Below are positions 13,534 to 63,185 of a stretch of DNA of 64,000 nt, piece by piece (within the stretch, counting starts at the first letter, position 1; every line of letters starts with the position of its first letter). Made by a program: the position numbers and the translations under genes. Origin of the DNA: Octopus sinensis (taxonomy: Eukaryota); NCBI RefSeq assembly GCF_006345805.1, contig NW_021833008.1:31156-95155 (forward strand). Reading direction: 5' to 3'. The notes under the pieces are model-generated. The model was not told the origin of the DNA and did no database searches. It was given only the letters and a program-made list of their open reading frames with translations.

Positions 13534-14203
13534 TCTCTATATATAAAACTGAAATGTTTTTGGACCGCTTGGATCGCTTTCAAGGCCACTACAACCCATC
13601 GGATTGACACCAAAATTTACAGGGACATGTAAAATGAGGTGACGATGCCCGTGGGCTACCTTAGAAATCCCTATATGAAAAGGTGTCGTTGCTAGGGCCA
13701 AAAATCCACTTTGACAAGTCCACTCCCATTCTTTTACATATCTGTCTTCCTCACTCACGCTATTTCCTCCATTCCCCTCTAACTCCCCTTCAGTTTCCCT
13801 TTATAAGTTCGTCAAACGGCGTTCTTTATCTCACTGTCTGCATTCATAGAGAGAATTATCATTGCCACCAACAACACACAATCATGAGAACAAATATTAT
13901 GAATCAGATATTCCTTGCGTTCATTTATATATGTGTGTTCTATATATAAATATGTATATATAATGTATATATACAAAGTGTATATATCTGTATTTATGTA
14001 TATTAAACTTTTTAATACTTTTTCATAGTTATATTTATTTTTAAACAAATTATAAATATAATTTAATAATTTTTATTGTAAATTTAAATAATTTAAATTT
14101 TTCAATTTTATATTTTATATATTTTCTATATTATATTTTTATTTTTATGTTTTTGGTTTTTCAGTTTCATTTGCCTATTAGTGGTTTTATCTCTAATTTA
14201 ATG

Positions 14204-14235
<32 letters not shown>

Positions 14236-15467
14236 TTGTATATATAATGCGTGCACACACACACACACACATATATACATATATATATATAATGTGTGCA
14301 TTATGTGGTCGGTCGATTCAGCTGAAAATATGCACACCTATGTTAAAAGTGCTGGCAAGTTTGCATGACAACTATTTTTTTCCTCAAATGAAAGGCGTGA
14401 CCTCTAGGACAAAATTCCTCATCTTATAAATTGTGGCCCCAGTAGACCCGAATGAAATCGGGTTATATTAACCAAAATGTGAAAAGGGGTTTAAATGGGG
14501 CTGGAAGGGGATTAAAATTTAAAGGAGCGGGTGTTTAGCAATTCTCTGTTACATCAAGCTAAAAAATTTGCGCCAGCCTTTTAATCGTCAATGTGTTGCC
14601 GTCCATGATGAAGAAGTTTTGAATGCTTGCCATCGTGAGTCTACTGTCGTGAGAAAGAATCACTTCAAAACTTGGTGTTTATGAATTTTCTTTTACATCA
14701 AGTTCAAAATTTTACGCCAGCCGTTAAACTGTCAATACATTGCTGTCCATCGTTAAGAAATGCCAGCCATGGTGACTCTACTATCCTCAGATTCTATCCC
14801 TTCAAACTTTGGTTTCCAATATTTTATTATTTTTATTCAGCTAGCAAGTTCGTCTGTCCTTTTTAAATGTTAGCGTTTTGCTGTCTGCCTTGAAGCAGAC
14901 CTTTCCGTTGCCACTGCCTGATATTTATGATTGATCTTTCTAAATATTTTATTTCTCAACTTACTCAAGATCTTTTGTTGTTTATAAATGGGAGAGAGAT
15001 AGATAAAGATAGAGAGTAAGAGAAAGCGAGGGAGAGTCCGAGAGAAGGGAAGAGTAAGAGAGTGGGGAAAGTGAGAGAGAAAGGAGAGAGAAACAAAGAG
15101 GGAGAATCATCATCATCATCATCATCATCATCGTTTAACGTCCATTTTCTGTGCTAGCACGGGTTGGACAGTTTGACTGGGGTCTGGAAAGCCAGGAGGC
15201 TGCACCAGGCTCCAGTCTGATCTGGCAGTGTTTCTACAGGTGGATGACCTTCCTAACGCCAACCACTCTGTGAGTGTAGTGGGTGCTTTTTTCGTGCCGC
15301 CGGCACTGGTTCCAGGGGGGCTCGCAGCGGCAACGATCGGTTGGTGCCAGTCAAGGTGGCGCTGCAATCGGCCACGTTCGGATGGTGCTTTTTATGTGCT
15401 GAAAGGAAGCAACAGAAAGTAACAACCACACTCTTACCCGCGCGTAGACCGGGTCACCTTCAGCTAG
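13534..15467 (+). mobile_element. Complete non-autonomous Helitron (family H1) carrying an inverted RTE/SINE tail
   Basis: 5' A|TCTCTATATATAAAACTG; 3' hairpin acccgcgcgtagaccgggt followed by caccttcagCTAG|T; no TSD; same family as the units of the 43737-59940 array. Confidence 0.85.
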
Positions 15468-15760
15468 TCTATATATATAAAACTGAGAATGTATGTCTGT
15501 CTGTCTGTGTGAATCACTAAAACTTGAGAACTACACGACCAATTTCATTCAATTTTATACATGCGTTACTTGGGGTCCATGTAGTGTCATGGGCAAAAAA
15601 AAGTTTTTAAGTTCATGCCTAGGGCGAGCCCACAGCAATATCATATCTTCTCCACTATTTCAGTATTACGTGTTAAAAGTGAAACAAAAACATCTCTATT
15701 GTAATGTCAGATGCTTTCAGTTTAATATTGAAACTATTAAAGTGAAACTATTATATAACT
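15468..15760 (+). mobile_element. 5' part of a second non-autonomous Helitron-like family (H2), abutting the H1 CTAG end
   Basis: TCTATATATATAAAACTGAGAATG plus (TGTC)n; matches the starts at 33666 and 35233. Confidence 0.75.
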
Positions 15761-28575: not shown

Positions 28576-28679
28576 GACTGAAAGGAATTAAATTTTGTTC
28601 GATTATTATTGTAAAAATATTGATTTCTATATTTGTTATTTGATAATTATAAGTTACGATATGTATATATATTTCATCA

Positions 28680-41304: not shown

Positions 41305-43712
41305 ATAGCCAGAAGGGAAGCTAGGAGACAGGTATATCTAGCCAAGAGGGAAGAAGAAAAGAAGAAGTTTGCCTATGTTCAGTGTCATGAGGACCAAAGA
41401 ACTGAAGTATTTTGGATTGCAAGACAGTGTGTGAGAGAAAATTCTGTTGTCATAGGGGAGAAATGTGTCTGCATGGATGATGAGCACTTATTTTTAATGA
41501 GTCTGCAAATAAAGTGCTGAATGTTGAAAATGAATGGCACGAGGAGAGTCTACCGAATGTCAACCCAACTGAGAGACCAGCTACCTGAATCAACAGTACC
41601 TTAGAAGACAAAGCAATTAAGGCTATGAAGACAGGGAAAACCCCTGGCCCATCAGGAATCACTGCTGAGATGCTTAAAATATCTGGCAGTGTTGGTTATT
41701 GTCGAGTCACCCGTATTGTAAATCAGGTAGTTCATGAAGAAGTCCTACCTAATAACTGGTGTGGCTGCACCATAGTCAACTGCTACAAAGGTAAAGGTGA
41801 TGCCTTAGATAGAAATAATTTCAGAAGTATTAAATTGTTGGATCAGGTGATGAAAGTTACAGAGAGTCGTAGCCCAATTAATTAGGGAGAGATTTAGTTG
41901 AGATGCAGTTTGGGTTTGTGCCATGTAGAAGCACCACTGATGCTATATTTCTGGTAAGGCAACTGCAGGAGAAATACCTAGCCAAAGATAAACTTCTGTA
42001 ATTGGCTTTTGTTGACCTGGAGAAAACTTTTAACAGAGTCCTCCAATCCCTTATCTGGTGGTCAATGTGGAAACTAGGGATAGACAAGTGGTTGGTAAGA
42101 GCCATACAAGCCTTGTACAGGGACACTACCAGTAAGGTGTGGGCAGGCAAATAATTCAGGGTACAAGTAAAGGTTCACCAAGGGTCAGTGCTCTGTCCTG
42201 CATTATTCATCATAGTCCTCCAGACAATACAGAGGAATTTTAGACAGGCTGCCCCTGGGAGCTCCTCTATGCTGATGACCTTTCTCTTATAGTTGAATCA
42301 CTACTTGAACTAAAGATGAAGTTCTAGATTTTGAAGCAAAATCTAGATTCAAAAGGCCTTAGAGTTAACCTAGTGAAAACCAAAGTCACAGGTAGTAGGA
42401 AGGCAGAGAAATCACAAATCCCTACAGTTAGATGATCCTGCTCAACCTGTAGAAAAGGTGTAGTTAGAAACTCCATCAGATGCACCCAGTGTAAGCTTTA
42501 GACTCTTAAAGGGGCAGCAGCATCAGAGGAAGGTTAACAAGGAAACTAACTTTTGTATGTCGAAGGTGCACAGGTACAATTAATGCTGAAAATGTGCAGA
42601 AAATAAACTCCATCAACTGCCAGATGGGCATGGTAGAGGTAGTAGATAGCTTCCATTATCTAGGTGACCAACTTAGTAGTGGAGGTGAATGTTTCAAGAG
42701 CATGACTGTCAGAATAAGATTGGGTTAGGCAAAGTTCAGAGAGCTCCTACCCTTGCTGGCAATGAAGGGCCTTTCTCTCAGAGTGAAAAGCAGATTGTTT
42801 GATGCGTGTGTGTGAACAGATTTGTTGCATGACAGTGAAACATGAGCTTTGACAGCTGAGGATATGTGTAGGCTTGAAAGAAATGAAGCCAGTATATTTC
42901 ATTGGATGTGCAATGTCAGTGTGCATGTTTGACAGAGTGTAAACATCTTGAGAGAAAAGTTAGGCAAAAGAGGAATGAGGTGTGAAAGAGAGACGACTGT
43001 GCTGGTATGGTCATATGATGCGTATGGATGAGGACAGCTGTGTAAAGAAGTGCCAATCTGTAACTGTGGAGGGAACCTGTGGTAGAGGTAGACTCAGGAA
43101 GACATGGAGTGAGGTGGTGAAGCATGATCTTCAAACTTTGAGCCTTGCAGAGACAATGACTGGTGACCAAAACCTTTGGTGATGTACTCTGCTTGAGAGA
43201 ACCCATCAAGCTAAGTGTGCCTGTGTTGGTGGCACATAAAGAACATCTTTTGAACATTAGGCCTGACAGAGGCAAAGTGGCTGAGTTCCTTTCAAGCATT
43301 GGGCCTAACAAAGGCTAAGTGGCTGAGTTCCTCTCAAGAATTGGGCCTCACAGAGGCAAGTTGGCTGAGGTCTTTTCGAGCATTGAGCCTCATGGTGGCA
43401 ATGTGGCTGAATTCCTTTCAAGTATTGGGCCCGACGGAGGCAAGTTGGCTGAGTTTCTTTCAAGTGTTGGGCCTCATGGAGACAATAACCAAGACCTTTG
43501 GCATTATATTGTGCTTGAGAAGATCCATCAAGCCAAACAAAAGTGCAGTTGTGGCAGGTACCGTTGTTACGCAAACTGGTACCGATGTCGGTGGCACGTA
43601 AAAACACCTTTTACCCTCTTGGAGTGGTTGGTGTGAGGAAAGGCATCCAGTCATAGAAAACCATGCCACATGAGACTGGAGTCTGGTGCAGCCTTCCAGA
43701 TGTTAAATGATG
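41305..43712 (+). mobile_element. Degenerate RTE LINE with 42-bp repeats in the 3' UTR
   Basis: ORFs 41625-41885 and 42982-43182; repeats gggcctcacagaggcaagttggctgag... at 43270-43480; tail to ~43712. Confidence 0.88.
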
Positions 43713-43736: not shown

Positions 43737-46514
43737 CTAGCTGAAGGTGACCCACTCTACGCGCAGGTAAGAGTGTGGTTGTTACTTTCTGTTGCTTCCT
43801 TTCAGCATGTAAAAAGCACCATCTGAACGTGGCGGATTGCAGCGCCGCCTTGACTGTCTTCTGTGCTGGTGGCACATAAAAAGCACCAACCGATCGTGGC
43901 CGCTGTCAACCCCCCTGGCACCTGTGCCGGCGGCACGAAAAAAGCACCCACTATGCTCACAGAGTGGTTGGCGTTTGGAAGGGCATCCACCTGTAGAAAC
44001 ACTGCCAGATCAGACTGGAGCCTGGTACCACCTCCTGGCTTCCCAGACCCCTGTCAAACTGTCCAACCCGTGCTAGCACGGAAAACGGACGTTAAACGAT
44101 GATGATGATCATGATGATTCTCCCTCTTTGTTTCTTTCTCCTTTCTCTCTCACTTTCCCACTCTCTTACTCTTCCTTTCTCTCGGACTCTCCCTCGCTTT
44201 CTCTTACTCTCTATCTTTATCTATCTCTCTCCCATTTATAAACAACAAAAGATCTTGAGTAAGTTGAGAAATAAAATATTTAGAAAGATCAATCATAAAT
44301 ATCAGGCAGTTACAAAGGAAAGGTCTGCTTCAAGACAGACAGCAATACACTAACATTTAAAAGGGACAGACGAACTTGCGAGCTGAATAAAAATAATAAA
44401 ATATTGGAAACCAAAGTTTGAAGGGATAGACTTTGAAGATAGTAGAGTCACCATGGCTGGCATTTCTTAACGACGGACAGCAACGTATTGACAGTTCAAC
44501 GGCTGGCGTAAAATTTTGAACTTGATGTAAAAGAAAATCCCTAAAAACTAAGTTTTGAATTGATTCTTTCTCACGACAGTAGACTCACGATGGCAAGCAT
44601 TCAAAACTTCTTCATCATGGACAGCAACACATTGACGATTAAAAGGCTGGTGCAAATTTTTTTAGCTTGATGTAACAGAGAATTGCTAAACACCCGCTCC
44701 TTTAAATTTTAATCCCCTTCCAGCCCCCTTTTCACATTTTGGTTAATATAACCCGATTTCATTTGGGTCTACTGGGGTCACATTTTATAAGATGAGGACT
44801 CAACCAAGTTTCCCGAGTTCTGGTCATAGACCATAGAACAGTCAAGCAAGTTTCCCGAGTTCTGGTCATAGACCATAGAACACTTAGCTAAAATCTAGTT
44901 TCTACCTAGTCTGAACCGATCAATCCGCCGCAGTCTTCATCCACACAGAGCTTACTCTACCATGTTCCAGTTCCAGCGACAGACAACCAGACCAGCCAGT
45001 CATGTTCCTGCTCCAGCCAATGACGACGCTAACATACACCAGCAACGCCACCGACGCCTTCATCTCAACGTCCCCTTTCTCTGCTGTCGCCATCACCATC
45101 GTCGTCCTTCACCTTCACGTCATCTCCATCTCCGTCGCCTTCATCTCCAGCAACACTAATATGTACATAGCACTCATTCAGGTTTAGCTTTCACGCTGTT
45201 AGGATCTTCTATACCAAGTAACGTGGCACAGCATTGAAGCCACAACCGCTACACGACATGTGTTCAACTGGCATCTGCACTTGTGATCCGAACATCCTGT
45301 TACAGAACGAACTGCTATTATGTACTTTACTAGGAACTGGTAAATTAACTCCATCTTGTCTGAAATACCCTTAGAGACTTTTCCTATGCGCTGTATTTTG
45401 TTTTGCCCGCATACACCTTGTTTGTACTTCTGTCGCACACACGAACACACATAGTTAAATGCTATCTCTGTCACATTCATACGCCACACATGCCTTTCTC
45501 GCTTGTTTTCCATGCTCAATGTGCCCTTGTAAATACAACTCATCTCTGTAAGACCCTAGATCGGTCACACATACATAGAGAAAGTTGTTTGTCTCTTACA
45601 ACGCGCCAGCATGCCACACTTTTGTTCCTGCACGACCGAGGTATATAATAACTCAAGCACTGGCTGGCAGCCTCAGCCTTACTGCATTAATCACTGGCAT
45701 ATTCAATACTGTACGCTGTATTTCAGCCTAACAAGCCCTATTGCACTCATGCACCTCTGTTCTGCACGTGTACTCCCTTGTTTTGCAACACGTGTGCGTC
45801 AGCTCAATTCTTCTCCCGACTCAAAGCACGTCGGATGTTCACATGCACTGCTCTCATGTTTACGCATAATTTCCCCTGTTAGAACCCTGTTGGTCACGTA
45901 ATTAACAGAGAAAATTATCTGTCTCGCACCCAAGTTGCACCCAAAAAGTGTAAAGAAGCAATCAGTTCCCTTTACGTAACTATCAAAAAGTATTAAAAAG
46001 TTTCATACACATAAATACAGATATATACACTTTGTATATATACATTATATATACATATTTATATATAGAACACACACACACACACATATATAAATGCTCG
46101 TTGGTGTGTTCTGTTTGTATTTGGTCGATGGGCGCGTTGACAGGTAGACAATAGAATGCGGTGGCGATGGCGATGGAATATTTGTTTCTCTGTATGAATG
46201 CAGAGAGATACATGAGTAAAAGTTATGGGAAGCTAAGAGATAGAGTGAGTGAAAATGTTCTTACATTAAATAACGGGAGTGGAATTGTCAAAGTTATAAA
46301 TGAAGGGGAGTTAGAGGGGGAATGGAGGAAATATTGTGAGTGAGGAAGATGGCCCCTAGCAACCACACCTTTAAGATAGGGGTTTCTAAGGTAGCCCACG
46401 GGCATCGTTACCTCATTCTACATGTCCCTGTAAATTTTGGAGCGAATCGGACGGGACGTAGTGGCATTGAAAGCGAACCAAGCGGTAAAAACGCATTTCA
46501 GTTTTATATATAGA
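43737..46514 (-). mobile_element. Helitron H1 array unit 1 (2778 bp) with unique internal segment
   Basis: CTAG at 43737-43740 with hairpin; 5' TC at 46513-46514. Confidence 0.85.
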
Positions 46515-48575
46515 CTAGCTGAAGGTGACCCGCTCTACGCGCGGGTAAGAGTGTGGTTGTTACTTTCTGTTGCTTCCTTTCAGCACGTAAAAAGCACCAT
46601 CCGAAAGTGGCGGATTGCAGTGCCGCCTTGACTGTCTTCTGTGCTGGTGGCACGTAAAAAGCACCAACCGATCGTGGCCCTTGCCAGCCCCCCTGGCACC
46701 TGTGCAGGCGGCACTAAAAAGCACCCACTACGCTCACAGAGTGGTTGGCGTTTGGAAGGGCATCCACCTGTCGAAACACTGCCAGATCAGACTGGAGCCT
46801 GGTACAGACTCCTGGCTTCCCAGACCCCTGTCAAACTGTCCAACCCGTGCTAGCACGGAAAACGGACGTTAAACGATGATGATGATCATGATGATTCTCC
46901 CTCTTTGTTTCTTTCTCCTTTCTCTCTCACTTTCCCACTCTCTTACTCTTCCTTTCTCTCGGACTCTCCCTCGCTTTCTCTTACTCTCTATCTTTATGTA
47001 TCTCTCTCCCATTTATAAACAACAAAAGATCTTGAGTAAGTTGAGAAATAAAATATTTAGAAAGATCAATCATAAATATCAGGCAGTTACAAAGGAAAGG
47101 TCTGCTTCAAGACAGACAGCAAAACACTAACATTTAAAAGGGACAGACGAACTTGCGAGCTGAATAAAAATAATAAAATATTGGAAACCAAAGTTTGAAG
47201 GGATAGAATTTGAGGATAGTAGAGTCACCATGGCTGGCATTTCTTAACGACGGACAGCAACGTATTGACAGTTCAACGGCTGGTGTAAAATTTTGAACTT
47301 GATGTAAAAGAAAATCCATAAAAACCAAGTTTTGAATTGATTCTTTCTCACGACAGTAGACTCACGATGGCAAGCATTCAAAACTTCTTCATCATGGACG
47401 GCAACACATTGACGATTAAAATGCTGGCGCAAATTTTTTAGCTTGATGTAACAGAGAATTGCTAAACACCCGCTCCTTTAAATTTTAATCCCCTTCCAGC
47501 CCCATTTATACCCCTTTTCACCTTTTGGTTAATATAACCCGATTTCATTTGGGTCTACTGGGGCCACATTTTATAAGATGAGGACTCAACCAAGTTTCCC
47601 AAGTTCTGGTAATAGACCATAGAACACTCAACCAAGTTTCCCGATTTCTGGTCATAGACCATAGAACAGTCAAGCAAGTTTCCCGATTTCTGGTCATAGA
47701 CCATAGAACACTCGACCAAGTTTCCCGAGTTCTGGTCATAGACCATAGAACACTAAAGTAAGTTTCCCGAGTTCTGGTCATTTGCAGAATAAATAGAGAC
47801 GGCGGAGGTGGCAGACGTCGTTGCAATGTAAACATGATTTGTTATAAGAGAAAGATTGTCCAGATTGTGTGTTGGTGGTGTTGGTGGTGGCTATGATAAT
47901 TATCATTAGGAAAAAGAGTGAGTGAGTGAGGAAGACATACATAAGTTGTGGCGATGATAATTGTAGACCCCTTTTCACATTTTGATGAAGAGAACCCGAT
48001 TTCATTCGGGTGTACTGGGGCTACATATAGGTGTGTGTGTGTGTGTGTGTGCACGCTGTAGAAATTAAATTAGAGATAAAACCACTAATAGGGAAATGAA
48101 ACAGTAAAAAACCAAAAACAAAAACATAAAAATAAAAATATAATATTAGATATATGAATATATGTGTGTGTTGACAGGTAGACAATAGAATGCGATGGCG
48201 ATGTAATATTTGTTACTGTCCATGAACACTGATAGATACATGAGTAAAATGTATAGGAAGGTAAGAGATAGAGTGAGTGAAAATGTTCTTGGAAGAGAGT
48301 AAATAGCGAGTGATTTTGAGGAAGACTTTACATTAAATAATGGTAGTTGCATTGTCTCTTGAAGAGGAGTGAGAGAGTACTGGAGGAAATAGGGTCAGTG
48401 AGGGAGATGGCCCCTAGCAACCACACCTTTTAAGATAGGGATTTGTAAGGTAGCCCACGCGCATCGTCACCTCATTCTACATGTCCCTGTAAATTTTGGA
48501 GCGAATCGGACGGGATGTAGTGGCATTGAAAGCGAACCAAGCAGTAAAAACGCATTTCAGTTTTATATATAGAGA
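46515..48575 (-). mobile_element. Helitron H1 array unit 2 (2061 bp)
   Basis: Exact ga|ctag junctions at both ends. Confidence 0.88.
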
Positions 48576-50096
48576 CTAGCTGAAGGTGACCCGCTCTACG
48601 CGCGGGTAAGAGTGTGGTTGTTACTTTCTGTTGCTTCCTTTCAGCACGTAAAAAGCACCATCCGAACGTGGCGATTGCAGCGCCGCCTTGACTGGCTTCT
48701 GTGCTGGTGGCACGTAAAAAGCACCAACCGATCGTGGCCGCTGCCAGCCCCCCTGGCACCTGTGCAGGCGGCACGAAAAAAGCACCCACTACGCTCACAG
48801 AGTGGTTGGCGTTAGGAAGGGCATCCACCTGTCGAAACACTGCCAGATCAGACTGGAGCCTGGTGCAGCCTCCTGGCTTCCCAGACCCCTGTCAAACTGT
48901 CCAACCCGTGCTAGCACGGAAAACGGACGTTAAACGATGATGATGATGATGATGATTCTCCCTCTTTGTTTCTTTCTCCTTTCTCTCTCACTTTCCCACT
49001 CTCTTACTCTTCCTTTCTCTCGGACTCTCCCTCGCTTTCTCTTACTCTCTATCTTTATGTATCTCTCTCCCATTTATAAACAACAAAAGATCTTGAGTAA
49101 GTTGAGAAATAAAATATTTAGAAAGATCAATCATAAATATCAGCAGTTACAAAGGAAAGGTTTGCTTCAAGACAGACAGCAAAACACTAACATTTAAAAG
49201 GGACAGACGAACTTGCGAGCTGAATAAAAATAATAAAATATTGGAAACCAAAGTTTGAAGGGATAGACTTTGAAGATAGTAGAGTCACCATGGCTGGCAT
49301 TTCTTAACGACGGACAGCAACGTATTGACAGTTCAACGGCTGGCGTAAAATTTTGAACTTAATGTAAAAGAAAATCCCTAAAAACCAAGTTTTGACTAGA
49401 TTCTTCCTCACGACAGTAGACTCACGATGGCAAGCATTCAAAACTTCTTCATCATGGACGGCAACACATTGACGATTAAAAGGCTGGAGGAAATTTTTTA
49501 GCTTGATGTAACAGAGAATTGCTAAACACCCGCTCCTTTAAATTTTAATCCCCTTCCAGCCCCATTTATACCCCTTTTCACCTTTTGGTTAATATAACCT
49601 GATTTCATTTGGGTGTACTGGGGCCACATTTTATAAGATGAGGACTCAACCAAGTTTCCCAAGTTCTGGTCATAGACCATAGAACACTCAACCAAGTTTC
49701 CCGATTTCTGGTCATAGACCATAGAACAGTCAAGCAAGTTTCCCGAGTTCTGGTCATAGACCATAGAACACTCGACCAAGTTTCCCGAGTTCTGGTCATA
49801 GACCATAGAACACTAAACCAAGTTTCCCGAGTTCTGGTCATTTGCAGAATAAATAGAGACGGCGGAGGTGGCAGACGTCGTTGCAATGTAAACATGATTT
49901 GTTATAAGAGAAAGATTGTCCAGATTGTGTGTTGGTGGTGTTGGTGGTGGCGATGATAATTATCATTAGGAAAAAGAGTGAGTGAGTGAGGAAGACATAC
50001 ATAAGTTGTGGCGATGATAATTGTAGACCCCTTTTCACATTTTGATGAAGAGAACCCGATTTCATTCGGGTGTACTGGGGCTACATATAGGTGTGT

Positions 50097-50139
<43 letters not shown>

Positions 50140-50673
50140 ACGCTGTAGAAATTAAATTAGAGATAAAACCACTAATAGGGAAATGAAACAGTAAAAAAAC
50201 CAAAAACAAAAACATAAAAATAAAAATATAATATTAGATATATGTATATATGTGTGTGTGTGTGTGTTGACAGGTAGACAATAGAATGCGATGGCGATGT
50301 AATATTTGTTACTGTCCATGAACGCTGATAGATACATGAGTAAAATGTATAGGAAGGTAAGAGATAAGAGTGAGTGAAAATGTTCTTGGAAGAGAGTAAA
50401 TCGCGACAGAGTGATTTGAGGAAGACTTTACATTAAATAACGGTAGTTGCATTGTCAAATGAAGAGGAGTGACAGAGTACTGGAGGAAATAGGGTGAGGT
50501 AGGAAGATGGCCCCTAGCAACCACACCTTTTAAGATAGGGATTTGTAAGGTAGCCCACGCGCATCGTCACCTCATTCTACATGTCCCTGTAAATTTTGGA
50601 GCGAATCGGACGGGATGTAGTGGCATTGAAAGCGAACCAAGCGGTAAAAACGCATTTCAGTTTTATATATAGA
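48576..50673 (-). mobile_element. Helitron H1 array unit 3 (2098 bp)
   Basis: Exact ga|ctag junctions; near-identical to unit 2. Confidence 0.88.
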
Positions 50674-50734
50674 CTAGCTGAAGGTGACCCGCTCTACGCG
50701 CGGGTAAGAGTGTGGTATATATATAAATGTATAC

Positions 50735-50784
<50 letters not shown>

Positions 50785-53700
50785 GTAAATACAGATATAT
50801 GCACTTTGTATATATAAAGATTATTATATATACATATTTATATATAGATACACAAACACATATATAAATTAACCCAATAAATATCTGATTCATAATATTT
50901 GTTGTCATGATTGAGTGGTGGTTGTGGCGATGATAATTCTCTCTATGAATGCAGACAGACGTGGAGAGTGAGAGTGTGTGAAAGCGCTGTGGAAGGCAGG
51001 GAGGGGGATAACGGACGCTGTGAAACGACGTTATAAAGAGAAAGTGAATGTAAGGGAGGTAGACGCTGTGAAACGACGTTATAGATAGAAAGTGAAAGGA
51101 AGGGAGAAAAGTGAGTGAGTGATGGAGGAAGACAGATACATAAAAGAATGAGAGTGTTGGATGTTTTGTTTGTTGGACCAATGTATTAAAGTAGTATTGT
51201 TTTATTGTTTTAAAACGAAAGAGGCAATGTGTTTGTTTCAAAAATTAAAAAATCTGTTATAGTGAATGAAATTAGAATTCACACTCAGCTCAGTTTTGTA
51301 GAAAGAGTATCACGATGTGAACTCATGAGTTGGGAGTTTGACTGAGAGAGTTTATATGGTGACACATGCCAGTCCTTTCGACACCACCTAAACAATGGAA
51401 TAGTGTATAAAATGTAATTAACAACTCATTCACTTTATGAATGTCTTATGTTAGCGAAGAAACAATAACTTGACAAAACCGTTTAATGGAGACGTAGAAG
51501 GAATCGGAAAATGAGGAATAAAGATAATGAGTTGGATCAAATGTTTGCAAACATCTGAACCCAATGTTCTTTATGAACCATCTTCTTTTTAATGTCTTTA
51601 TTTTCAAGAATGAAGAGATAATGAAGAGGTGCAAAATAAAAAATCAAGCAAAATTTCATGACTTACAATCAGTTTTCTTTTGTCAGAGCCTCCTGATAAA
51701 CCACGTTCCTTGTGCGCTCATGATTGCCAAGAATGAAGAGTTTATGTGGATTTCCAACTCGAGAACAGGTACGTACAATTGACCATGACTGAAAACCGGT
51801 TGTGACAGGTTAATGCCTACAATGTCCAGTGATTGTCCCTGTGACTTGTTGATTGTCATCGCGAAGCATAGTTTTATTGGAAATTGAAAGCGTTTAAACT
51901 GAATGGGAACATCAGAGGGTGAAATACTCATTTTATGTATCATTTTGATTGTTCCTACAAATGGTCCACTCAAAATTTCAGCAGTTATAACATGGCTTTG
52001 AATCCTCCTAATAACCATTCGGGTTCCATTGCATATTCAGGCGTTTCCATATTTCTGAGCACCATGATTGGAGCACCAACTTTCAAACACAAATGATGAG
52101 GTGGAAGTCCCGGAGGTGTTAGCTTGTTGAGTAGCTCGGGTGGATATTTGACTGCATCATTCTCATATTTATTTGTATCGATGGACATGAAAGAAACTAT
52201 CTCACCAGGATTCATATCAAGTACTTGTTTATTTGTAGCATGAGCTGTGTATTATGAGGCGATAGAATAGCTCTTGCTCTTAGCCAATCGAGATCCTGGA
52301 AGTTGGTTTCGACGTCAGGTAAAACGGCTCTTATAAGTTCTTCTACATTTGGAACGAAATTCCCAAAAGGCAACCGAATATGCTCATCATCAACGAAAGG
52401 CAAAACTCCATCACCAAGATCTAATAGGTGTTTTGCGAAAGCCTCAGACTCCACATCACCATGTAGGTGGACTGTCATGTTTGTTTGAAGATGGCGACTG
52501 ATAACACTGTGCCACACAAAAGAATGCTTTATACATGCATTAACCTCATCAGCTCTAGCCTGCTCGGACAACAGGAAGAGTTTGTCGAAAATCTCCTGCC
52601 ATGAGAAACGTAGCTCCACCCATTATTTTTGTATTGTGACGCAAATCTTGGAGAGTTCTGTCAAGAGCCTCAAACATGGCCTTATTACTCATTGTAGCCT
52701 CATCCCAAATAAAAAGACTGCATTCACGAAGAAGTCTTGCTCTTGAGGAACTACGATCTATATTACATATAGGATTATCTTTCTTTCCAATGTCCATGGG
52801 CAATTTGAATGCACTATGTGCCGTACGGCCGCCTTGAAGCAGTGTCGCTGCAATACCACTTGAGGTACATGCAATGGCAAATCGACGTTCAGCGCGCAGC
52901 TTTGCGAGAATCAAATTGATAACGAAAGTTTTACCAGTACCACCTGGAGCATTCAAAAAGAAAAGCTTTCCTTGGTTCAATCTAACGCTGTCAATATTTC
53001 ATTATAAATCTCTCTTTGTTCAGGCAAAAGTCTTGGTTCATCTCGCGTAATTGTTTCCGTCAATTCGGCAATGTTGTAGTTGTTTTTGACATGTATTCAA
53101 CATCCAAAGGCGCTTCATGATGGACAGGTGTTGGCAGATGGAATTCACTTAAACCGCGTATAACATAGCGTCTGATGTGTCTGTCCATGTCGATTAATGC
53201 CTCATTATAAACATCGTCGTTGCCATCACGTTGCGCTAAATTAGCCTGTATGTCCTTTGATAGGCTCTGTCTGAACGATTCCAAAGGTTAAGAGGGTTGC
53301 TGGGATTACAGTGGATTAATATGCTACAAAACAATCGACGCATTTGCCATGGCAGTTTACAATTTGAGGCCTCTGCTAATGTCCTGTGTAAGTGGTCGTC
53401 ATTGAGAAGAAGTCCGCGCCTCAAACATGTTTTCCTGTAAGTGGCGCAGATGATACCATCAACCGTGCGAAGATCAGCAAAAGACTTCGGTCCAGTAACT
53501 ACATGAAGTAGCATTCTCAAAAAGATTTCCTGTTTGGTAGGATGGATATTATACACACGCCAAATGACGTTCTTCCTAGAAACACCGGGCCAATTGTCAA
53601 GTTCTGTTCCATGTGACCTGCGCTTCCAATTATTGTTGTTGTATGTGTAATATTCCGGTACTTCAGGGTAAATGAGAGTAGCAGCAAACTCATCAACTGA

Positions 53701-54938
53701 ACACAATTTAAAAAATGCTGTAAGCGTAGTCCCTTTTGGATTTTCAATGACTTGACGTGCATTTTTCTCTGTGAAGTAAACCAGCTGTCTCTTCTGTAAA
53801 TGAACATTCAGGTGGAAAACTGATGGTGAGCTTAGATGAATCTCGTATCAAAAATGCGCCACGCTGCTTAATTGGAGGATACATACCTACCCCAAACGAA
53901 TTGTTTAATTTCGTCATGTCTAAGGTCTTCATCACTGAACACAAACACGGCCATATCATCGCCCTTATTAATGTACTTGCAGAGGTATTGTATGCATCTC
54001 ACCGAACTGCAGTACTCAACATTAATGTGTGCATTAAATGTTTTGGAAAGCAAAGGGTTGAATGGAACGATCCAGGTATTATCAACATCGAATGTTTTTA
54101 GCCGTTGTTTAATTGTAGCTGTGCGGCGACCCAAACCTGGGTCACATATATGAAAGAGAGGACGGGAAAATGAAATTTTTGCAATGTAAACATGATTTGT
54201 TTAAGAGAAAGATTGTCATGATTGTGTGTTGGCGGTGGCGATGATAATTATCATTAGGAAAAACATAAGTTGTGGCGATGATAATTCTAGACCCCTTTTC
54301 ACATTTTGATGAAGAGAACCCGATTTCATTCGGGTCTACTGGGGCCACATATAGGGTGTGTGTGTTGTGTGTGTGTGTGTGTGTGTGTGTGTGCACACTG
54401 TAGAAATTAAATTAGAGATCAAACCACTAACAGGGAAATGAAACAGTAAAAAAACAAAAACATAAAAATATAATATTAGATATATGTATATATATGTGTG
54501 TGTGTGTGTGTGTGTGGTGACAGTTGACAGGTAGAAAATGGCGATGGCGATGGGGATGGCGATGTAATATTTGTTACTGTCCATGAACGCTGATAGATAC
54601 ATGAGTAAAATGTATAGGAAGGTAGAGATAAGAGTGAGTGAAATGTTCTTGGAAGAGAGTAAAGAGCGACAGAGCGATTTGAGGAAGACTTTACATTAAA
54701 TAACGGTAGTTGCATTGTCAAATGAAGAGGAGTGACAGAGTACTGGAGGAAATAGGGTGAGGTAGGAAGATGGCCCCTAGCAACCACACCTTTTAAGATA
54801 GGGATTTGTAAGGTAGCCCACGCGCATCGTCACCTCATTCTACATGTCCCTGTAAATTTTGGAGCGAATCGGACGAGATGTAGTGGCATTGAAAGCGAAC
54901 CAAGCGGTAAAAACGCATTTCAGTTTTATATATAGAGA
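50674..54938 (-). mobile_element. Helitron H1 array unit 4 (4265 bp) containing a RepHel remnant
   Basis: Same termini as its neighbours; internal Rep/helicase coding. Confidence 0.88.
51670..54134 (-). pseudogene. Helitron RepHel pseudogene (C-terminal Rep plus PIF1-like SF1 helicase), frameshifted, N-terminus missing
   Basis: VPFNPLL..HINVEYC..QYLCKYINKG; FFLNAPGGTGKTF (Walker A); IWDEATM (Walker B); GDFRQTLPVV; QFPIKLCFAMTINKSQGQSL; FSHGQLYV. Confidence 0.93.
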
Positions 54939-56144
54939 CTAGCTGAAGGTGACCCGCTCTACGCGCGGGTAAGAGTGTGGTTGTTACTTTCTGTTGCTTC
55001 CTTTCAGCACGTAAAAAGCACCATCAGAACGTGGCCGATTGCAGCACCGCCTTGACTTGCTTCTGTGCCGGTGGCACGTAAAAAGCACCAACCGATCGTT
55101 GCCACTGCAAGCCCCCCTGGCACCAGTGCCGGCGGCACGAAAAAAGCACCAACTACACTCACAGAGTGGTTGGCGTTAGGAAGGTCATCCACCTGTAGAA
55201 ACACTGCCAGATCAGACTGGAGCCTGGTGCAGCCTTCTGGCTTCCGAGACCCCGGTTACACTGCGCAACCCGTGCTAGCACGGAAAATGGACGTTAAACG
55301 ATGATGATGCTGATGATTCTCCGTATTTGTTTCTCTCTCCTTTCTCTCTCACTTTCCCACTCTCTTACTTTTATTTTCTCTCGGACTCTCCCTCGCTTTC
55401 TCTTACTCTCTATCTTTATCTATCTCTCTCCCATTTATAAACAACAGAAGATCTTGAGTAAGTTGAGAAATAAAATATTTAGAAAGATCAATCAGAAATA
55501 TGAGGCAGTGGCAATGGAAAGGTCTGCTTCAAGGCAGACAGCAAAACGCTAACATTTAAAAGGGACAGACGAACTTGCGAGCTGAATAAAAATAATAAAA
55601 TATTGGAAACCAAAGTTTGAAGGGATAGAATCTGAGGATAGTAGAGTCACCATGGCTGGCATTTGTTGACGACGGACAGCAACGTATTGACAGTTTAACG
55701 GCTGGCGTAAAATTTTGAACTTGATGTAAAAGAAAATTCGTAAACACCAAGTTTTGAAGTGATTCTTTCTCACGACAGTAGACTCACCATGGCAAGCATT
55801 CAAAACTTCTTTATCATGGACGGCAACACATTGACGATTAAAAGGCTGGCGCAAATTTTTTAGCTTGATGTAACAGAGAATTCCTAAACACCCACTCCTT
55901 GAAATTTCAATCCCCTTCCAGCCCCATTTAGACCCCTTTTCACATTTTGGTTAATATAACCCGATTTCATTCGAGTCTACTGGGGCCACATTTTATAAGA
56001 TGAGGAATTTTGTCCTAGAGGTGACGCCTTTCATTTGAGGAACAAAATAGTTGTCATGCAAACTTGTCAGCACCTTTAACATAGGTGTGCATATTTTCAG
56101 CTGAATCGACCGACTACGTAATGCACACAATATATATATATGTG

Positions 56145-56176
<32 letters not shown>

Positions 56177-58338
56177 CACGCATTATATATACAAATGTAT
56201 ACAAATGAGATATATATCTGTATAAATTAAATTAGAGATAAAACCACTAATAGGCAAATCAAACAGTGAAAAACAAAAACAAAAACATAAAAAAAGAAAA
56301 TATAACATAGAAAATATATCTATATATATAAACTCTAGTTGTGTGAGTGTCTGTCCCCTTCGATTTAGATTCCTAACTCCTCCCACATTTTGCGGTGCAG
56401 TTTAACCAAATTCGGGTATCTTATAGTCGTGATCCATATCGAGCCCGTCTGACTATTAGCGCGCGTCAACGATGAGTCTAACGATTTTAAAAATAATTTA
56501 ACATAATTTTTTATTCCATTTTAATGCATAAAATGCATCGTATGTCGATGGCGGCGGAGTTGGCGTCCACGCTCACAGCTGCACCTGTTTGCTTCTCCCC
56601 CTTCCTCCCTCGTGAAGCTGTGGGGAAGGGAGTGTAAAGAAATCAACGTCGTAATGCGTTGTGAAGGAAACCAGCGTTCTTTTAGAACGACTTCATGGCT
56701 TGAAGACACCAAAACAGAAATGGCTAAGAAAGCCCGAATTTATAAGGGAAGTAACTCTCTAAAAATGCTTATATAGTTATTTCCCTTACAAACCCGAGCA
56801 ACGCCGGGCGATACTGCTAGTCTATATATATAAAACTGTAGTTGTGTGAGTGTCTGTCCCCTTCGATTTTGATTCCTAACTACTCCCACATTTTGCGGTG
56901 TAGTTTAACCAAATTCGGGTATCTTATAGTCGTGATTCATATCGAGCCCGTCTGGCTATTAGCGCGCGTCTACGATGAGTCTACGATTTTAAAAATAATT
57001 TAACATCATTTTTTATTCCATTTTAATGCATAATTTTTCGTGTGTCGATGGCAGCAGAGTTGGCGTCCATGGTCACACCTGCACCTGTGTTGCTTCCCTC
57101 CCTTCTTCCCTCCCTCGTGAAGCTGTGGGGAAGGGAGTGTAAGGAAATCAACGTCGTAAAGCGTTGTCAAGGAGACCAGCGTTCTTTTAGAACAACGACT
57201 TCATGGCTTGAAGACACTGAGTCAACGATTAAAAAAAAATTACCATCACTTTTTATTCCATTTTTAATGCATTTTTTTGCTATAACTCTCTAAAAATGCT
57301 TATATAGTTATTTCCCTTACAAACCCGAGCAACGCGGGCGATACTGCTAGTCTTTATATATAAAAGTAAGGTTGTGTGTCTGTCTCATACGATTTAGATT
57401 CCTAACCACTCCCACATTTTGCGGTGCAGTGTAACCAAAACCGGGTATCTTATAGTCGTGATTCATATCGAGCCCTTCTAGGTATTAGCGCGCGTCTACG
57501 ATGAGTCTACGATTTAAAAAAAAATTTACTATCATTTTTTATTCCATTTTAATGCATTTTTTGCTATTATATAAGGGAAGTAACTCTCTAAAAATGTCTA
57601 CGATGAGTCAACGATTAAAAAAAAATTACTATCATTTTTTATTCCATTTTTAATGCATTTTTTGCTATTTGTTTTGCTATAACTCACTAAAAATGCTTAT
57701 ATAGTTATTTCCCTTACAAACCCGAGCAACGCCGGGCGATACTGCTAGTAAAATATAAAATTGAAAACTTTAAATTATTTAAATTGAAAATAAAAATTAT
57801 TAAATTATATTTATAATTTGTTTAAAAATATATATAACTATGAAAAAGTATAATATACATAAATACAGATATATACACTTTGTATATATACATTATATAT
57901 ACATATTTATATATAGAACACACACACACACACAGATATAAATGAATGCAAGAATATCTGATTCATAATATTTGTTCTCATGCTCGTGTGTTGTTTGTTG
58001 GTGACAGACATATACTTAAAAGAACGCCGCCGAAGTGATAGGAAGGTAGGAAACAGAGTCAGTGAAAAAGAAAGGAAATAGCGATAGTGACAGATACTTT
58101 AAATAACCGTAGTGGACTTCTGAAAGTTATGTAAGAGAGGGAAAGGAGGAAATAGGGTGAGTGAGGAAGATGGCCCCTAGCAACCACACCTTTTAAGATA
58201 GGGATTTCTAAGGTAGCCCACGCGCATCGTCACCTCATTCTACATGTCCCTGTAAATTTTGGAGCGAATCGGACGGGATGTAGTGGCATTGAAAGCGAAC
58301 CAAGCGGTAAAAACGCATTTCAGTTTTATATATAGAGA
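54939..58338 (-). mobile_element. Helitron H1 array unit 5, interrupted by the 56319-57748 trimer; same subtype as 13534-15467
   Basis: Termini as above; internal sequence collinear with the reverse complement of 13534-15467. Confidence 0.85.
56319..57748 (+). mobile_element. Head-to-tail trimer of short Helitrons (H3-type 3' ends): 56319-56820, 56821-57350, 57351-57748
   Basis: Each begins TC and ends cccgagcaacgc(c)gggcgatactgCTAG; inserted between A and T with no TSD. Confidence 0.9.
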
Positions 58339-59931
58339 CTAGCTGAAGGTGACCTGCTCTACGCGCGGGTAAGAGTGTGGTTGTTACTTTCTGTTGCTTC
58401 CTTTCAGCACGTAAAAAGCACCATCCGAACGTGGCGGATTGCAGCGCCGCCTTGACTGGCTTCTGTGCCAGTGGCACGTAAAAAGCACCAACCGATCGTG
58501 GCCGCTGCAAAACACTAACATTTAAAAGGGACAGACGAACTTGCGAGCTGAATAAAAATAATAAAATATTGGAAACCAAAGTTTGAAGGGATAGACTTTG
58601 AAGATAGTAGAGTCACCATGGCTGGCATTTCTTAACGACGGACAGCAACGTATTGACAGTTTGACGGCTGGCGTAAAATTTTGAACTTGATGTAAAAGAA
58701 AATCCCTAAAAACCAAGTTTTGACTTGATTCTTTCTCACGACAGTAGACTCACCATGGCAAGCATTCAAAACTTCTTCATCATGGACGGCAACACATTGA
58801 CGATTAAAAGGCTGGAGGAAATTTTTTAGCTTGATGTAACAGAGAATTGCTAAACACCCGCTCCTTTAAATTTAATCCCCTTCCAGCCCCATTTATACCC
58901 CTTTTCACCTTTTGGTTAATATAACCCGATTTCATTTGGGTCTACTGGGGCCACATTTTATAAGATGAGGACTCAACCAAATTTCCCAAGTTCTGGTCAT
59001 AGACAATAGAACAGTCAAGCAAGTTTCCCGATTTCTGGTCATAGACCATAGAACAGTCAAGCAAGTTTCCCGATTTCTGGTCATAGACCATAGAACAGTC
59101 AACCAAGTTTCCCGAGTTCTGGTCATTTGCAGAATAAATAGAGACGCGGAGGGGCAGACGTCGTTGCAATGTAAACATGATTTGTTATAAGAGAAAGATT
59201 GCCCAGATTGTGTGTTGGTGGTGTTGGTGGTGGCGATGATAATTATCATTAGGAAAAGAGTGAGTGAGTGAGGAAGACATACATAAGTTGTGGCGATGAT
59301 AATTGTAGACCCCTTTTCACATTTTGATGAAGAGAACCCGATTTCATTCGGGTGTACTGGGGCCACATATAGGTGTGTGTGTGTGTGTGTGCACGCTGTA
59401 GAAATTAAATTAGAGATAAAACCACTAATAGGGAAATGAAACAGTAAAAAACCAAAAACAAAACATAAAAATAAAAATATATATTAGATATATGTATATA
59501 TGTGTGTGTATGTGTGTGTGTGTGTGTTGACAGGTAGACAATAGAATGCGATGGCGATGGGGATGGCGATGTAATATTTGTTACTGTCCATGAACGCTGA
59601 TAGATACATGAGTAAAATGTATAGGAAGGTAAGAGATAGAGTGAGTGAAAATGTTCTTGGAAGAGAGTAAATAGCGACAAAGTGATTTGAGGAAGACTTT
59701 ACATTAAATAACGGTAGTTGCATTGTCAAGTGAAGAGGAGTGACAGAGTACTGGAGGAAATAGAGTGAGGTAGGAAGATGGCCCCTAGAAACCACACCTT
59801 TTAAGATAGGGATTTCTAAGGTAGCCCACGCGCATCGTCACCTCATTCTACATGCCCCTGTAAATTTTGGAGCGAATCGGACGGGATGTAGTGGTATTGA
59901 AAACGAACCAAGCGGTAAAAACGCAATTTCA

Positions 59932-59940
<9 letters not shown>
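58339..59940 (-). mobile_element. Helitron H1 array unit 6, with internal deletion near 58508; 5' end merges into (TA)n
   Basis: ga|ctag junction at 58338/58339; cagttttatat at 59930-59940. Confidence 0.82.
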
Positions 59941-59981
<41 letters not shown>

Positions 59982-60083
59982 AAAAAAGGAGATGTCGAAC
60001 ACGAGTGGTGATATATAAAAAAGGAAATGAAGAAAATGCTGACAATAATTGAAGTAATTTAAGTAATTTAATTAGGTGAAAGT

Positions 60084-63051: not shown

Positions 63052-63057
63052 ATAAAT

Positions 63058-63185
63058 CATTATCATCTTCATTTAACATCCATCGTCCATGCTGGCATGG
63101 GTTGGATAGTTTGACCAGGGCTGGTAAGCTGAGGCACTGCACCAGACTCCAGTCTGATTTGGTATGGTTTCTGCAGCTGGATGCC
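63058..63185 (-). mobile_element. RTE/SINE 3' tail fragment
   Basis: catttaacatccatcgtccatgctggcatgggttgg. Confidence 0.7.

What the first reader, a model, noticed from the sequence alone, without database searches (positions are those of the whole stretch)
43737..59940. 16-kb heterogeneous head-to-tail Helitron train: candidate self-targeting landing-pad system
Seen: six minus-strand units (2778, 2061, 2098, 4265, 3400 including a nested insert, and ~1600 bp) joined by five exact CTAG|TC junctions (46514/5, 48575/6, 50673/4, 54938/9, 58338/9). All share the 5' end and the 3' hairpin acccgc-gcgtaga-gcgggt, but internal content differs: unique cargo in unit 1, RepHel in unit 4, a different subtype in unit 5. 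Established: rolling-circle replication of one donor gives homogeneous concatemers; Helitrons insert at A|T. Inference: heterogeneity points to sequential insertion of different family members at the A|TC 5' junction of the resident element, which each insertion regenerates, perhaps with local duplication for units 2/3/6. Prediction: a polarised age gradient with the newest unit at the right end. The same junction type occurs in the trimer at 56319 and the dimer at 15467.
Basis: partly seen in the sequence, partly recalled or inferred. Interest (0 to 1): 0.8.

Follow-up and report, generated by a model that had tools for sequence, protein, structure and literature searches.

The report
Mixed head-to-tail Helitron array in octopus
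Six different copies of a rolling-circle transposon (Helitron) sit joined exactly end-to-start in an octopus genome; the array is real and truly mixed, but such arrays and the proposed way of building them are already described, and here local duplication and recombination contributed as much as new insertions.

Summary
Six minus-strand Helitron units (2778, 2061, 2098, 4265, 3400 and about 1606 bp) are joined by five exact CTAG|TC junctions at the stated coordinates, and all carry the same 3' hairpin. The host is an Octopus species.

The array is truly heterogeneous:
- U4's body is star-like with dispersed autonomous-type copies (1.8-2.1% apart).
- U5's tail groups with copies elsewhere, not with its neighbours.

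It is not six independent arrivals:
- The tails of U1, U2, U3 and U6 form a tight local clade (K2P 0.018-0.034) and share a 42-bp minisatellite seen nowhere else.
- The heads of U2, U3, U4 and U6 form a local clade.
- U3's head is a significant U4/U2 mosaic.

The predicted age gradient is not demonstrable (trend p=0.10).

Exact junctions recur nearby, including one between two different Helitron families and a nested trimer that was heterogeneous when it formed. Transposase-mediated end-to-start joining is therefore real in this genome.

Head-to-tail Helitron arrays (bat, maize, Arabidopsis) and the model of insertion at host A | 5' T of a resident element (Du et al. 2008) are already published. 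This is a new member of a known kind, of moderate interest. A genome-wide census, which I could not run, is needed to test the landing-pad idea.

The parts
43737..46514 (-). U1 (2778 bp). It has a mosaic A/B-type head, about 1.1 kb of unique internal sequence (44885-45976), two 42-bp minisatellite repeats (about 44780-44884) and an A-type tail. Its 3' hairpin carries two transitions. Its CTAG is followed by TCTATATATATATATAT, which is either host (TA)n or a stub of another 5' end.
46515..48575 (-). U2 (2061 bp). A chimera of a B-type head (about 790 bp), a 42-bp minisatellite (about 47590-47790) and an A-type tail (about 1070 bp). The 5' end is TCTC.
48576..50673 (-). U3 (2098 bp). Same chimera type as U2 (95.9% identical over the full length). 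The first ~250 bp of its head is nearly identical to U4, and the rest to U2. The 5' end is TC. A SINE-like captured segment lies at about 48644-48954.
50674..54938 (-). U4 (4265 bp). A deletion derivative of the autonomous-type (B) element. It has a B head, a truncated RepHel and a B tail that shares only the last ~40 bp with the other units.
51686..54200 (-). RepHel remnant inside U4. It carries the Pif1 helicase and 2B domain, is broken by several frameshifts, and lacks the N-terminal Rep (Helitron_like_N) part.
54939..58338 (-). U5 (3400 bp). An A-type element, about 1970 bp without its insert, with the same architecture as the solo-like copy at 13534-15467. Its tail belongs to a lineage outside the U1/U2/U3/U6 clade.
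56319..57748 (+). Nested trimer of a second Helitron family, in the opposite orientation. Units are Fa 56319-56820, Fb 56821-57350 and Fc 57351-57748. Flanks are host A|TC and CTAG|T, with exact CTAG|TC junctions between units. The units differ structurally (Fc is a short form) and by K2P 0.11-0.24.
58339..59944 (-). U6 (about 1606 bp). The same B-head + minisatellite + A-tail chimera as U2 and U3, with a ~460-bp deletion in the tail. Its 5' terminus is replaced by or merged into (TA)n at about 59940-59990.
13534..15467 (+). W13. A family-1 A-type Helitron with host A|TCTC at its 5' end. Its CTAG is joined exactly to the 5' end of a different Helitron family (F3, from 15468).
15468..15760 (+). 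5' part of a family-3 Helitron-like element (TCTATATATATAAAACTGAGAATG...). Solo copies of this family have host A|TCTC 5' ends at 33666 and 35233.

Best explanation
The region is a compound cluster of six non-autonomous copies of one Octopus Helitron family, all in the same orientation. It was built in two ways.

(1) At least three different family members were joined precisely 3' end to 5' end by the Helitron transposase: a tail lineage carrying a 42-bp minisatellite, the A-type U5, and the autonomous-derived U4. The simplest route is canonical insertion between the host A and the first T of a resident element's 5' TC. Chemically this equals joining an incoming CTAG-3'OH to a resident 5' end nicked by RepHel, which is the same reaction that closes Helitron circles. 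Mobilising a pre-formed heteromultimer by terminator read-through is an equivalent source.

(2) Inside the array, unequal recombination or duplication and gene conversion between the shared heads and tails produced the near-identical U2/U3 pair. These processes also spread one head type and one tail type over several units and made mosaics.

Later decay added a nested trimer of a second family, deletions, frameshifts and (TA)n expansion.

Shown: the exact junctions; at least three lineages; the local clades; the U3 mosaic; junctions between different families elsewhere.

Inferred: the joining chemistry, the order of events, and the share of transposition versus recombination.
For: Junctions and termini.

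The host is Octopus and the family is a RepHel Helitron.

Independent lineages:
- U5's tail is K2P 0.051-0.071 from the U1/U2/U3/U6 tails but 0.045 from W13. Thirteen sites group U5 with W13 and L1A.
- U4's body differs by 49-57 of 2748 sites from four dispersed copies, in a star-like pattern with 19 private changes.

Local origin:
- The U1/U2/U3/U6 tails are K2P 0.018-0.034 apart. They share a 42-bp minisatellite found in no other copy across the 333 kb sampled.
- Six exclusive sites unite the B heads of U2, U3, U4 and U6 against four external heads.
- U3's head is a mosaic. U3 vs U4 shows 1/243 then 7/216 differences; U3 vs U2 shows 10/243 then 1/216 (Fisher p = 0.029 and 0.012).

Transposase-type joining is general here:
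- W13|F3 links two families that share only about 18 nt of 5' terminus.
- The nested trimer's units differ by K2P 0.106-0.238 and in structure, although their host unit is at most about 0.045 old.
- L001 carries an exact A|B heterodimer.
- Solo copies show canonical A|TC...CTAG|T insertion (L003, L007).

Literature:
- Helitron circles have the same precise junction, and about 11.7% of events read through the terminator (PMC4778049).
- Heterologous head-to-tail maize Helitrons were explained by consecutive insertion (PMC2267711).
Against: - Only about ten other loci (roughly 270 kb) of the genome could be sampled. The 'local clades' could therefore be dispersed subfamilies that happen to be missing from the sample. 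One apparent array-specific variant (T at head position 43) did turn out to occur in L008 and L009.
- The B-head + minisatellite + A-tail chimera might be a mobile subfamily rather than a local recombinant.
- The order of events is unresolved.
- The host A at the array's 5' edge is hidden by (TA)n.
- No occupancy polymorphism or read-level support was available.
Confidence: 0.5

Rival explanations
1. Pure landing-pad model. Six separate transposition events each inserted a different family member at the host-A|TC 5' junction of the array, so age decreases from U1 to U6.
For: - Heterologous exact junctions occur here and elsewhere.
- Private substitution rates fall from U1 to U6: 1.18%, 0.59%, 0.78%, 0.69% (U4 body) and 0.33%.
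- In the W13|F3 pair the 3' partner looks older. F3 is 87-88% identical to its relatives, against 91-92% (tail K2P 0.045) for W13.
Against: - The trend is not significant (p = 0.10; homogeneity p = 0.35).
- Head private counts do not follow it: U2 10, U3 1, U4 15, U6 5.
- U2 and U3 are 95.9% identical over their full length.
- The U3 head mosaic and the local head and tail clades need exchange within the array.
- Informative splits among U1/U2/U3/U6 conflict rather than forming a ladder.
Confidence: 0.15
2. A heterogeneous multimer formed elsewhere and was mobilised as one composite unit by terminator read-through. It landed in a (TA)n tract and then underwent local duplication.
For: - Read-through of an intact terminator occurs in about 11.7% of Helraiser events, and circles are active donors (PMC4778049).
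- The [A-type][B-type] order of U5|U4 is the same as in the L001 heterodimer.
- (TA)n or TA-rich sequence lies on both sides of the array.
Against: - No second locus with the same multi-unit order and the same subtypes was found.
- L001's A and B copies are not specially close to U5 and U4. The A tails are 0.050-0.057 apart, and the B body is no closer than other dispersed copies.
- The model only moves the origin of the heterogeneity to another place.
Confidence: 0.2
3. A single rolling-circle concatemer, or satellite-like amplification of one donor, whose units later diverged by indels and nested insertions.
For: - The junction is exactly the circle junction.
- U2/U3, and partly U1 and U6, are close relatives.
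- Homogeneous tandem Helitron arrays are reported in bats and plants.
Against: - U5's tail and U4's body have their nearest relatives outside the array.
- There are two head types and two tail types.
- The trimer and the W13|F3 pair show that heterogeneous joining occurs without any common donor.
Confidence: 0.05
4. An assembly artefact: reads from dispersed Helitron copies were wrongly chained through their shared termini.
For: The units share 250-1100 bp of similar sequence at their ends, which can mislead assemblers. No read data were available.
Against: - The same junction type occurs in an independent public assembly of O. vulgaris (L001).
- It also occurs in a 1.4-kb trimer short enough to be covered by single reads.
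- The units differ by 2-10%, enough for long-read assemblers to tell them apart.
Confidence: 0.03

Closest known systems
Heterologous head-to-tail Helitron pair in maize (Du et al. 2008, BMC Genomics, PMC2267711)
   Same: Both have an exact CTAG|TC (G/T) junction with no host A between two Helitrons of different content. [quoted passage not shown]
   Different: Here there are six units rather than two, in an animal (Octopus). There is clear additional local duplication and gene conversion, plus a nested second-family trimer. No presence/absence polymorphism data exist here, whereas the maize pair had PCR evidence across lines.
Tandem Helitron arrays attributed to rolling-circle replication (Myotis: Pritham & Feschotte 2007; plants), as cited in PMC5876387, PMC2267711 and bioRxiv 10.1101/2024.11.21.624632
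   Same: [quoted passage not shown]
   Different: Those arrays are interpreted as repeats of one element. This array contains at least three lineages, two head types and two tail types.
Helraiser transposon circles and terminator read-through (Grabundzija et al. 2016, 2018; PMC4778049, PMC5876387)
   Same: The junction sequence (CTAG joined directly to TC) is the one made by RepHel when it closes a circle. Read-through explains composite elements.
   Different: Circles are episomal and contain a single element. Here the junctions are chromosomal and join different elements. No experiment has shown RepHel joining one element's 3' end to another element's 5' end.
Chimeric or composite Helitrons formed by end bypass (Thomas et al. 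2014, PMC4224331)
   Same: [quoted passage not shown]
   Different: In the bat cases host DNA lies between the two ends. Here the mosaics combine sequences of neighbouring array units.
Helitron/Helentron-derived satellite-like arrays (oyster Cg170 carriers, Drosophila DINE-1-related repeats; PMC7492417, PMC4067079)
   Same: Tandem repetition associated with rolling-circle elements in a mollusc or an insect.
   Different: Those arrays are short internal monomers repeated inside or beside Helentrons, not whole elements joined terminus to terminus.

Membership tests
Helitron (canonical RepHel rolling-circle transposon) | 5' terminus TC | tested here: met
   All readable 5' ends start TC or TCTC. 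U6's 5' end is unreadable.
Helitron (canonical RepHel rolling-circle transposon) | 3' terminus CTRR | tested here: met
   CTAG ends all six units, W13, the trimer and the L001/L003 copies.
Helitron (canonical RepHel rolling-circle transposon) | Short hairpin about 10-15 nt upstream of the 3' end | tested here: met
   A 6-bp stem with a 7-nt loop lies 13 nt from the end (-6.7 kcal/mol, DNA parameters). Family 2 has its own hairpin.
Helitron (canonical RepHel rolling-circle transposon) | Insertion between host A and T without target-site duplication | tested here: met
   Solo L003 reads A|TCTC...CTAG|T. Solo L007 does the same. The nested trimer reads A|TC...CTAG|T, and U5 is colinear with W13 across the insertion site. 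W13's 5' side is preceded by host A.
Helitron (canonical RepHel rolling-circle transposon) | An autonomous member encodes Rep (HUH, two tyrosines) fused to a Pif1-like helicase | tested here: met
   L001:9095-11893 carries Helitron_like_N (E = 9e-58) and PIF1 (E = 8e-57). In the window only a truncated, frameshifted remnant remains in U4.
Helitron (canonical RepHel rolling-circle transposon) | Mobility through a circular single-strand intermediate | not testable with these tools
   Needs a transposition or eccDNA assay.
Homogeneous rolling-circle concatemer (tandem array of one donor) | All units derive from one element and are each other's closest relatives along their whole length | tested here: not met
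   U5's tail and U4's body group with copies outside the array. There are two head types and two tail types.
Homogeneous rolling-circle concatemer (tandem array of one donor) | Exact 3'-end to 5'-end junction identical to the circle junction | tested here: met
   Five CTAG|TC junctions. Circle junction as in PMC4778049.
Heterologous head-to-tail Helitrons by consecutive insertion (Du et al. 2008 model) | G|T junction with no host nucleotide between elements of different content or lineage | tested here: met
   U6|U5, U5|U4 and U4|U3 join different subtypes. W13|F3 joins different families.
Heterologous head-to-tail Helitrons by consecutive insertion (Du et al. 2008 model) | Independent insertion shown by presence/absence among individuals or species, with the 3' unit occurring alone | not testable with these tools
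   No other haplotypes or orthologous loci could be fetched. The junction-ORF look-up found nothing.
Heterologous head-to-tail Helitrons by consecutive insertion (Du et al. 2008 model) | The 5' unit is younger than the 3' unit (polar age gradient) | tested here: inconclusive
   Private-substitution trend has a negative slope, p = 0.10. Head data disagree.
Helitron-derived satellite DNA | Long arrays of near-identical short monomers | tested here: not met
   Six units of 1.6-4.3 kb with different architectures.

The most novel reading that the evidence does not exclude
Octopus Helitron transposases use the 5' terminus (LTS) of any resident Helitron with a compatible ~18-nt end as a preferred integration site. 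They join an incoming element's CTAG-3' end to the resident's nicked 5' TC, a circle-closure reaction carried out in trans. Arrays therefore grow directionally and even mix different families. This self-targeting safe-haven strategy would seed composite elements and satellite-like arrays.
Probability: 0.3. Interest if true: 0.6.

Novelty: new member of a known kind. Interest (0 to 1): 0.35.

Why it matters
If Helitrons preferentially join onto the 5' ends of resident Helitrons, several things would follow:
- Helitrons would cluster in the same orientation.
- Composite and chimeric elements, and with them gene capture, would have a ready source.
- Some tandem repeats could be traced to this process.
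- It would be a way for a DNA transposon to spread without hitting genes.

This octopus locus, with its neighbours (a nested heterogeneous trimer and a junction between two families), is a clear animal example. It shows that exact end-to-start joining of unlike elements happens repeatedly. It also shows that recombination inside such arrays quickly blurs the record, so single-locus age gradients are unreliable.

The finding is a good seed for a genome-wide census, not a new mechanism in itself.

Tried and rejected
1. I looked up ORFs that span a junction to find the same locus in other assemblies. No exact product is on record. The homology search returned only four O. vulgaris proteins, and their loci L004-L007 carry no family-1 termini. 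L007 did yield a solo family-2 copy.
2. A metagenome scan for the 3' terminus found 0 hits. No tool gives direct access to the Octopus genome, so genome-wide junction statistics could not be computed.
3. I first took T at head position 43 to be array-specific. I rejected this once L008 and L009 showed the same base.
4. I tested whether the 42-bp minisatellite just outside the array (43214-43507) is the source of the 42-bp minisatellite inside U1/U2/U3/U6. The sequences are unrelated.
5. U1's unique 1.1 kb has no Pfam hit and no match in any fetched locus. Its origin is unresolved.
6. Rfam found no RNA families in the window.
7. Pritham & Feschotte 2007 and Du et al. 2009 are not held in the library. 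They are cited only through papers that describe them.
8. The TC versus TCTC 5' variants might mark junction-embedded copies (3 of 7, against 0 of 5 solo copies). The numbers are too few to conclude.
Full report
**What is there**

The window has 40% G+C and is eukaryotic. The coding remnant in unit 4 is 95% identical to an Octopus vulgaris protein, and its next hits are O. sinensis proteins. Its DNA differs by only 1.8-2.1% from four O. vulgaris loci. The host is therefore an Octopus; the species was not pinned down.

On the + strand they read GA|CTAG, which is CTAG|TC on the element (minus) strand, at 46514/5, 48575/6, 50673/4, 54938/9 and 58338/9. Unit lengths are 2778, 2061, 2098, 4265, 3400 and about 1606 bp. 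Every unit ends with the hairpin ACCCGC-GCGTAGA-GCGGGT, 13 nt before CTAG.

Solo copies of the same family at other loci show the canonical Helitron signature, host A|TCTC...CTAG|T with no duplication (L003). A fuller relative encodes Helitron_like_N plus PIF1 (L001:9095-11893). Membership in the Helitrons is therefore well supported.

**Corrections to the description**

- U1 and U3 begin TC-TATATAT. U2, U4 and U5, like all solo copies sampled, begin TCTC-TATATAT.
- U6's 5' terminus disappears into a (TA)n run.
- U4's 'RepHel' is a frameshifted remnant. It lacks the N-terminal Rep domain and about 4.3 kb present in L001's 8.6-kb copy.
- The insert in U5 is a plus-strand trimer of a second, ~0.4-0.5-kb Helitron family. 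Its own exact junctions are at 56820/1 and 57350/1, and its canonical flanks are A|TC and CTAG|T.
- At 15467 a family-1 element is joined to the 5' end of a third family. Solo 5' ends of that family (A|TCTC) lie at 33666 and 35233.

**Anatomy of the units**

The family has two head types and two tail types.

| Part | Size | Found in |
|---|---|---|
| B head | ~790 bp | Autonomous-type elements; U2, U3, U4, U6 |
| A head | - | U5, W13, L001's 3.6-kb elements, parts of U1 |
| A tail | ~1070 bp, with an embedded SINE-like segment | U1, U2, U3, U5, U6 (U6 has a 460-bp deletion) |
| B tail | shares only the last ~40 bp with the A tail | U4 |

- U2, U3 and U6 are therefore B-head/A-tail chimeras with a 42-bp minisatellite at the joint.
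- U1 has an A/B/A mosaic head, 1.1 kb of unique sequence, two minisatellite repeats and an A tail.
- U5 is a plain A-type element plus the nested trimer.
- U4 is a deleted B-type element.

**Are the units each other's closest relatives?**

I fetched ten other Octopus loci (about 270 kb) through proteins predicted from Helitron sequence.

*Tails.* U1, U2, U3 and U6 are K2P 0.018-0.034 apart. U5 is 0.051-0.071 from them, but 0.045 from W13 and 0.050-0.057 from the L001 copies. Thirteen sites group U5 with the outside copies. The 42-bp minisatellite occurs only in U1, U2, U3 and U6.

*B heads.* Six exclusive sites unite U2, U3, U4 and U6 against four external heads.

*U4's body.* It is star-like with dispersed copies, at 49-57 differences per 2748 sites and 19 private changes.

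*U3's head.* It is a mosaic:

| Comparison | Differences, columns <260 | Differences, columns >480 | Fisher p |
|---|---|---|---|
| U3 vs U4 | 1/243 | 7/216 | 0.029 |
| U3 vs U2 | 10/243 | 1/216 | 0.012 |

The array therefore contains at least three lineages that arrived separately: the minisatellite-tail lineage, U5 and U4. It also shows local duplication (U2/U3 are 95.9% identical over their full length) and gene conversion or recombination between units. Neither 'six independent insertions' nor 'one concatemer plus indels' fits.

**Is heterogeneous joining a real process?**

Yes, and the neighbours show this more clearly than the train does.

1. W13|F3 joins two families that share only about 18 nt at the 5' terminus. 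Homologous recombination or concatemerisation of one donor cannot produce this.
2. The nested trimer's units differ by K2P 0.106, 0.136 and 0.238. One of them is a structurally short form like the solo copy in L007. Their host, U5, is at most about 0.045 from its nearest relative, so units that were identical at insertion could have diverged by at most about 0.09. The trimer was therefore heterogeneous when it formed or when it landed.
3. L001 carries an exact A|B heterodimer, present three times because of a 12-16-kb segmental duplication.

In 333.5 kb examined, exact CTRR|TCT.TATATA junctions occur at four independent places, alongside several solo copies. With random A|T targeting in a 2.8-Gb genome this would be essentially impossible. 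The sample is small and partly ascertained through gene models that span Helitrons.

**Mechanism**

The junction is chemically the same as the one RepHel makes when it closes a circle. Circles are active donors, and about 11.7% of Helraiser events read through an intact terminator (PMC4778049).

Two routes give exact heterologous junctions:
- canonical insertion between the host A and the 5' T of a resident element, already proposed by Du et al. 2008 for a maize pair (PMC2267711);
- mobilisation of a composite by read-through.

A variant I consider plausible but untested is joining of an incoming 3' end to a resident 5' end that RepHel has nicked.

Once units with 250-1100 bp of shared sequence lie in tandem, unequal exchange and conversion follow. 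That is what the U2/U3 pair, the local clades and the U3 mosaic show.

**The predicted age gradient**

Private-substitution rates:

| Unit | Private substitutions | Rate |
|---|---|---|
| U1 (tail) | 12/1021 | 1.18% |
| U2 (tail) | 6/1021 | 0.59% |
| U3 (tail) | 8/1021 | 0.78% |
| U4 (body) | 19/2748 | 0.69% |
| U6 (tail) | 2/598 | 0.33% |

The rates fall in the predicted direction. The trend is not significant (p = 0.10) and homogeneity is not rejected (p = 0.35). Head data give a different order (U2 10, U3 1, U4 15, U6 5), as expected if conversion has reset parts of the units. Informative splits among U1/U2/U3/U6 conflict rather than forming a ladder. The gradient is therefore neither confirmed nor refuted.

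**Comparison with what is known**

- Perfect head-to-tail Helitron junctions and tandem arrays are reported from Myotis, maize, Arabidopsis and other genomes, and are usually ascribed to rolling-circle replication.
- A heterologous maize pair with the same G/T junction was explained by consecutive insertion, including the host-A|resident-T model.
- Chimeric Helitrons made from the ends of two copies are known from bats.
- The recent O. vulgaris repeat annotation lists Helitrons, but it mentions tandem repeats only for their detection with TRF and says nothing about tandem Helitron arrays.

This is a new and rather rich example of a known kind, not a new kind.

**Limits**

- No tool gave access to the whole Octopus genome, to reads or to other haplotypes.
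- The local clades rest on comparison with three or four independent outside lineages per segment.
- An assembly artefact is unlikely, because the same junctions occur in an independent assembly and in a 1.4-kb trimer, but it was not tested.

Noticed in passing
window 33666-34089 and 35233-35656: Two copies of a third Helitron-like family (5' end A|TCTCTATATATATAAAACTGAGAATG) lie 1567 bp apart and match the query equally. This suggests a local segmental duplication. Each copy contains an internal 148-bp tandem duplication.
   Followed up: partly
window 21924-22041 and 22953-23071: Two family-2 Helitron 3' ends with near-identical upstream sequence lie about 1030 bp apart. Each CTAG is followed by (TA)n. 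This is another local duplication that involves a Helitron end.
   Followed up: partly
window 12436-12744, 16219-16746, 20049-21582, 28676-28948, 36797-37163, 63056-63187; also inside the Helitron tails (e.g. 48644-48954): A ~300-bp dispersed repeat, apparently SINE-like, is embedded in the A-type Helitron tail and also occurs on its own many times in the window. At 19483-21404 it forms 63/125/172/351-bp tandem arrays. The Helitron probably captured it.
   Followed up: partly
window 43214-43507: A 42-bp minisatellite (about 7 copies) lies about 230 bp beyond the 3' edge of the array. It has the same period as the minisatellite inside U1/U2/U3/U6, but the sequences are unrelated.
   Followed up: yes
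window 15790-16060 and 60442-60810: A LINE-type reverse-transcriptase C-terminal fragment lies just after the family-3 5' part (my reading of the translated sequence, not tool-tested). A weak RVT_1 fragment lies just beyond the 5' edge of the array.
   Followed up: no
L001 (O. vulgaris OX597842.1) 1494-37530: An exact [3.6-kb A-type][8.6-kb B-type] Helitron heterodimer is repeated three times within 12-16-kb segmental repeats separated by (TA)n/(TG)n-rich spacers. The annotated 970-aa 'gene' (P0001) spans 17.5 kb across Helitron copies and is probably an annotation artefact.
   Followed up: partly
window ~59940-59990; L008 ~9186-9200; L009 ~9234-9248: In three of the family-1 5' ends sampled, the terminal TCTC is replaced by a long (TA)n run that continues into the element's own TATATAT. 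The 5' terminus seems prone to microsatellite expansion, which erases the insertion boundary.
   Followed up: no
window 46514, 50673, 15468 versus solo copies: 5' ends embedded in junctions sometimes lack one TC (U1, U3, F3 start TC-TATAT), whereas all five readable solo 5' ends carry TCTC. This could reflect alternative nick positions at junctions. The numbers (3/7 against 0/5) are too few to judge.
   Followed up: partly
L002 (O. sinensis) 16014-16070 and L010 (O. vulgaris) 18234-18290: Two older B-type copies end CTAA and share the same 3' flank (TGTTATTATATTACCGATAAT) and 78 substitutions. They are probably an orthologous insertion that predates the split of the two species.
   Followed up: no
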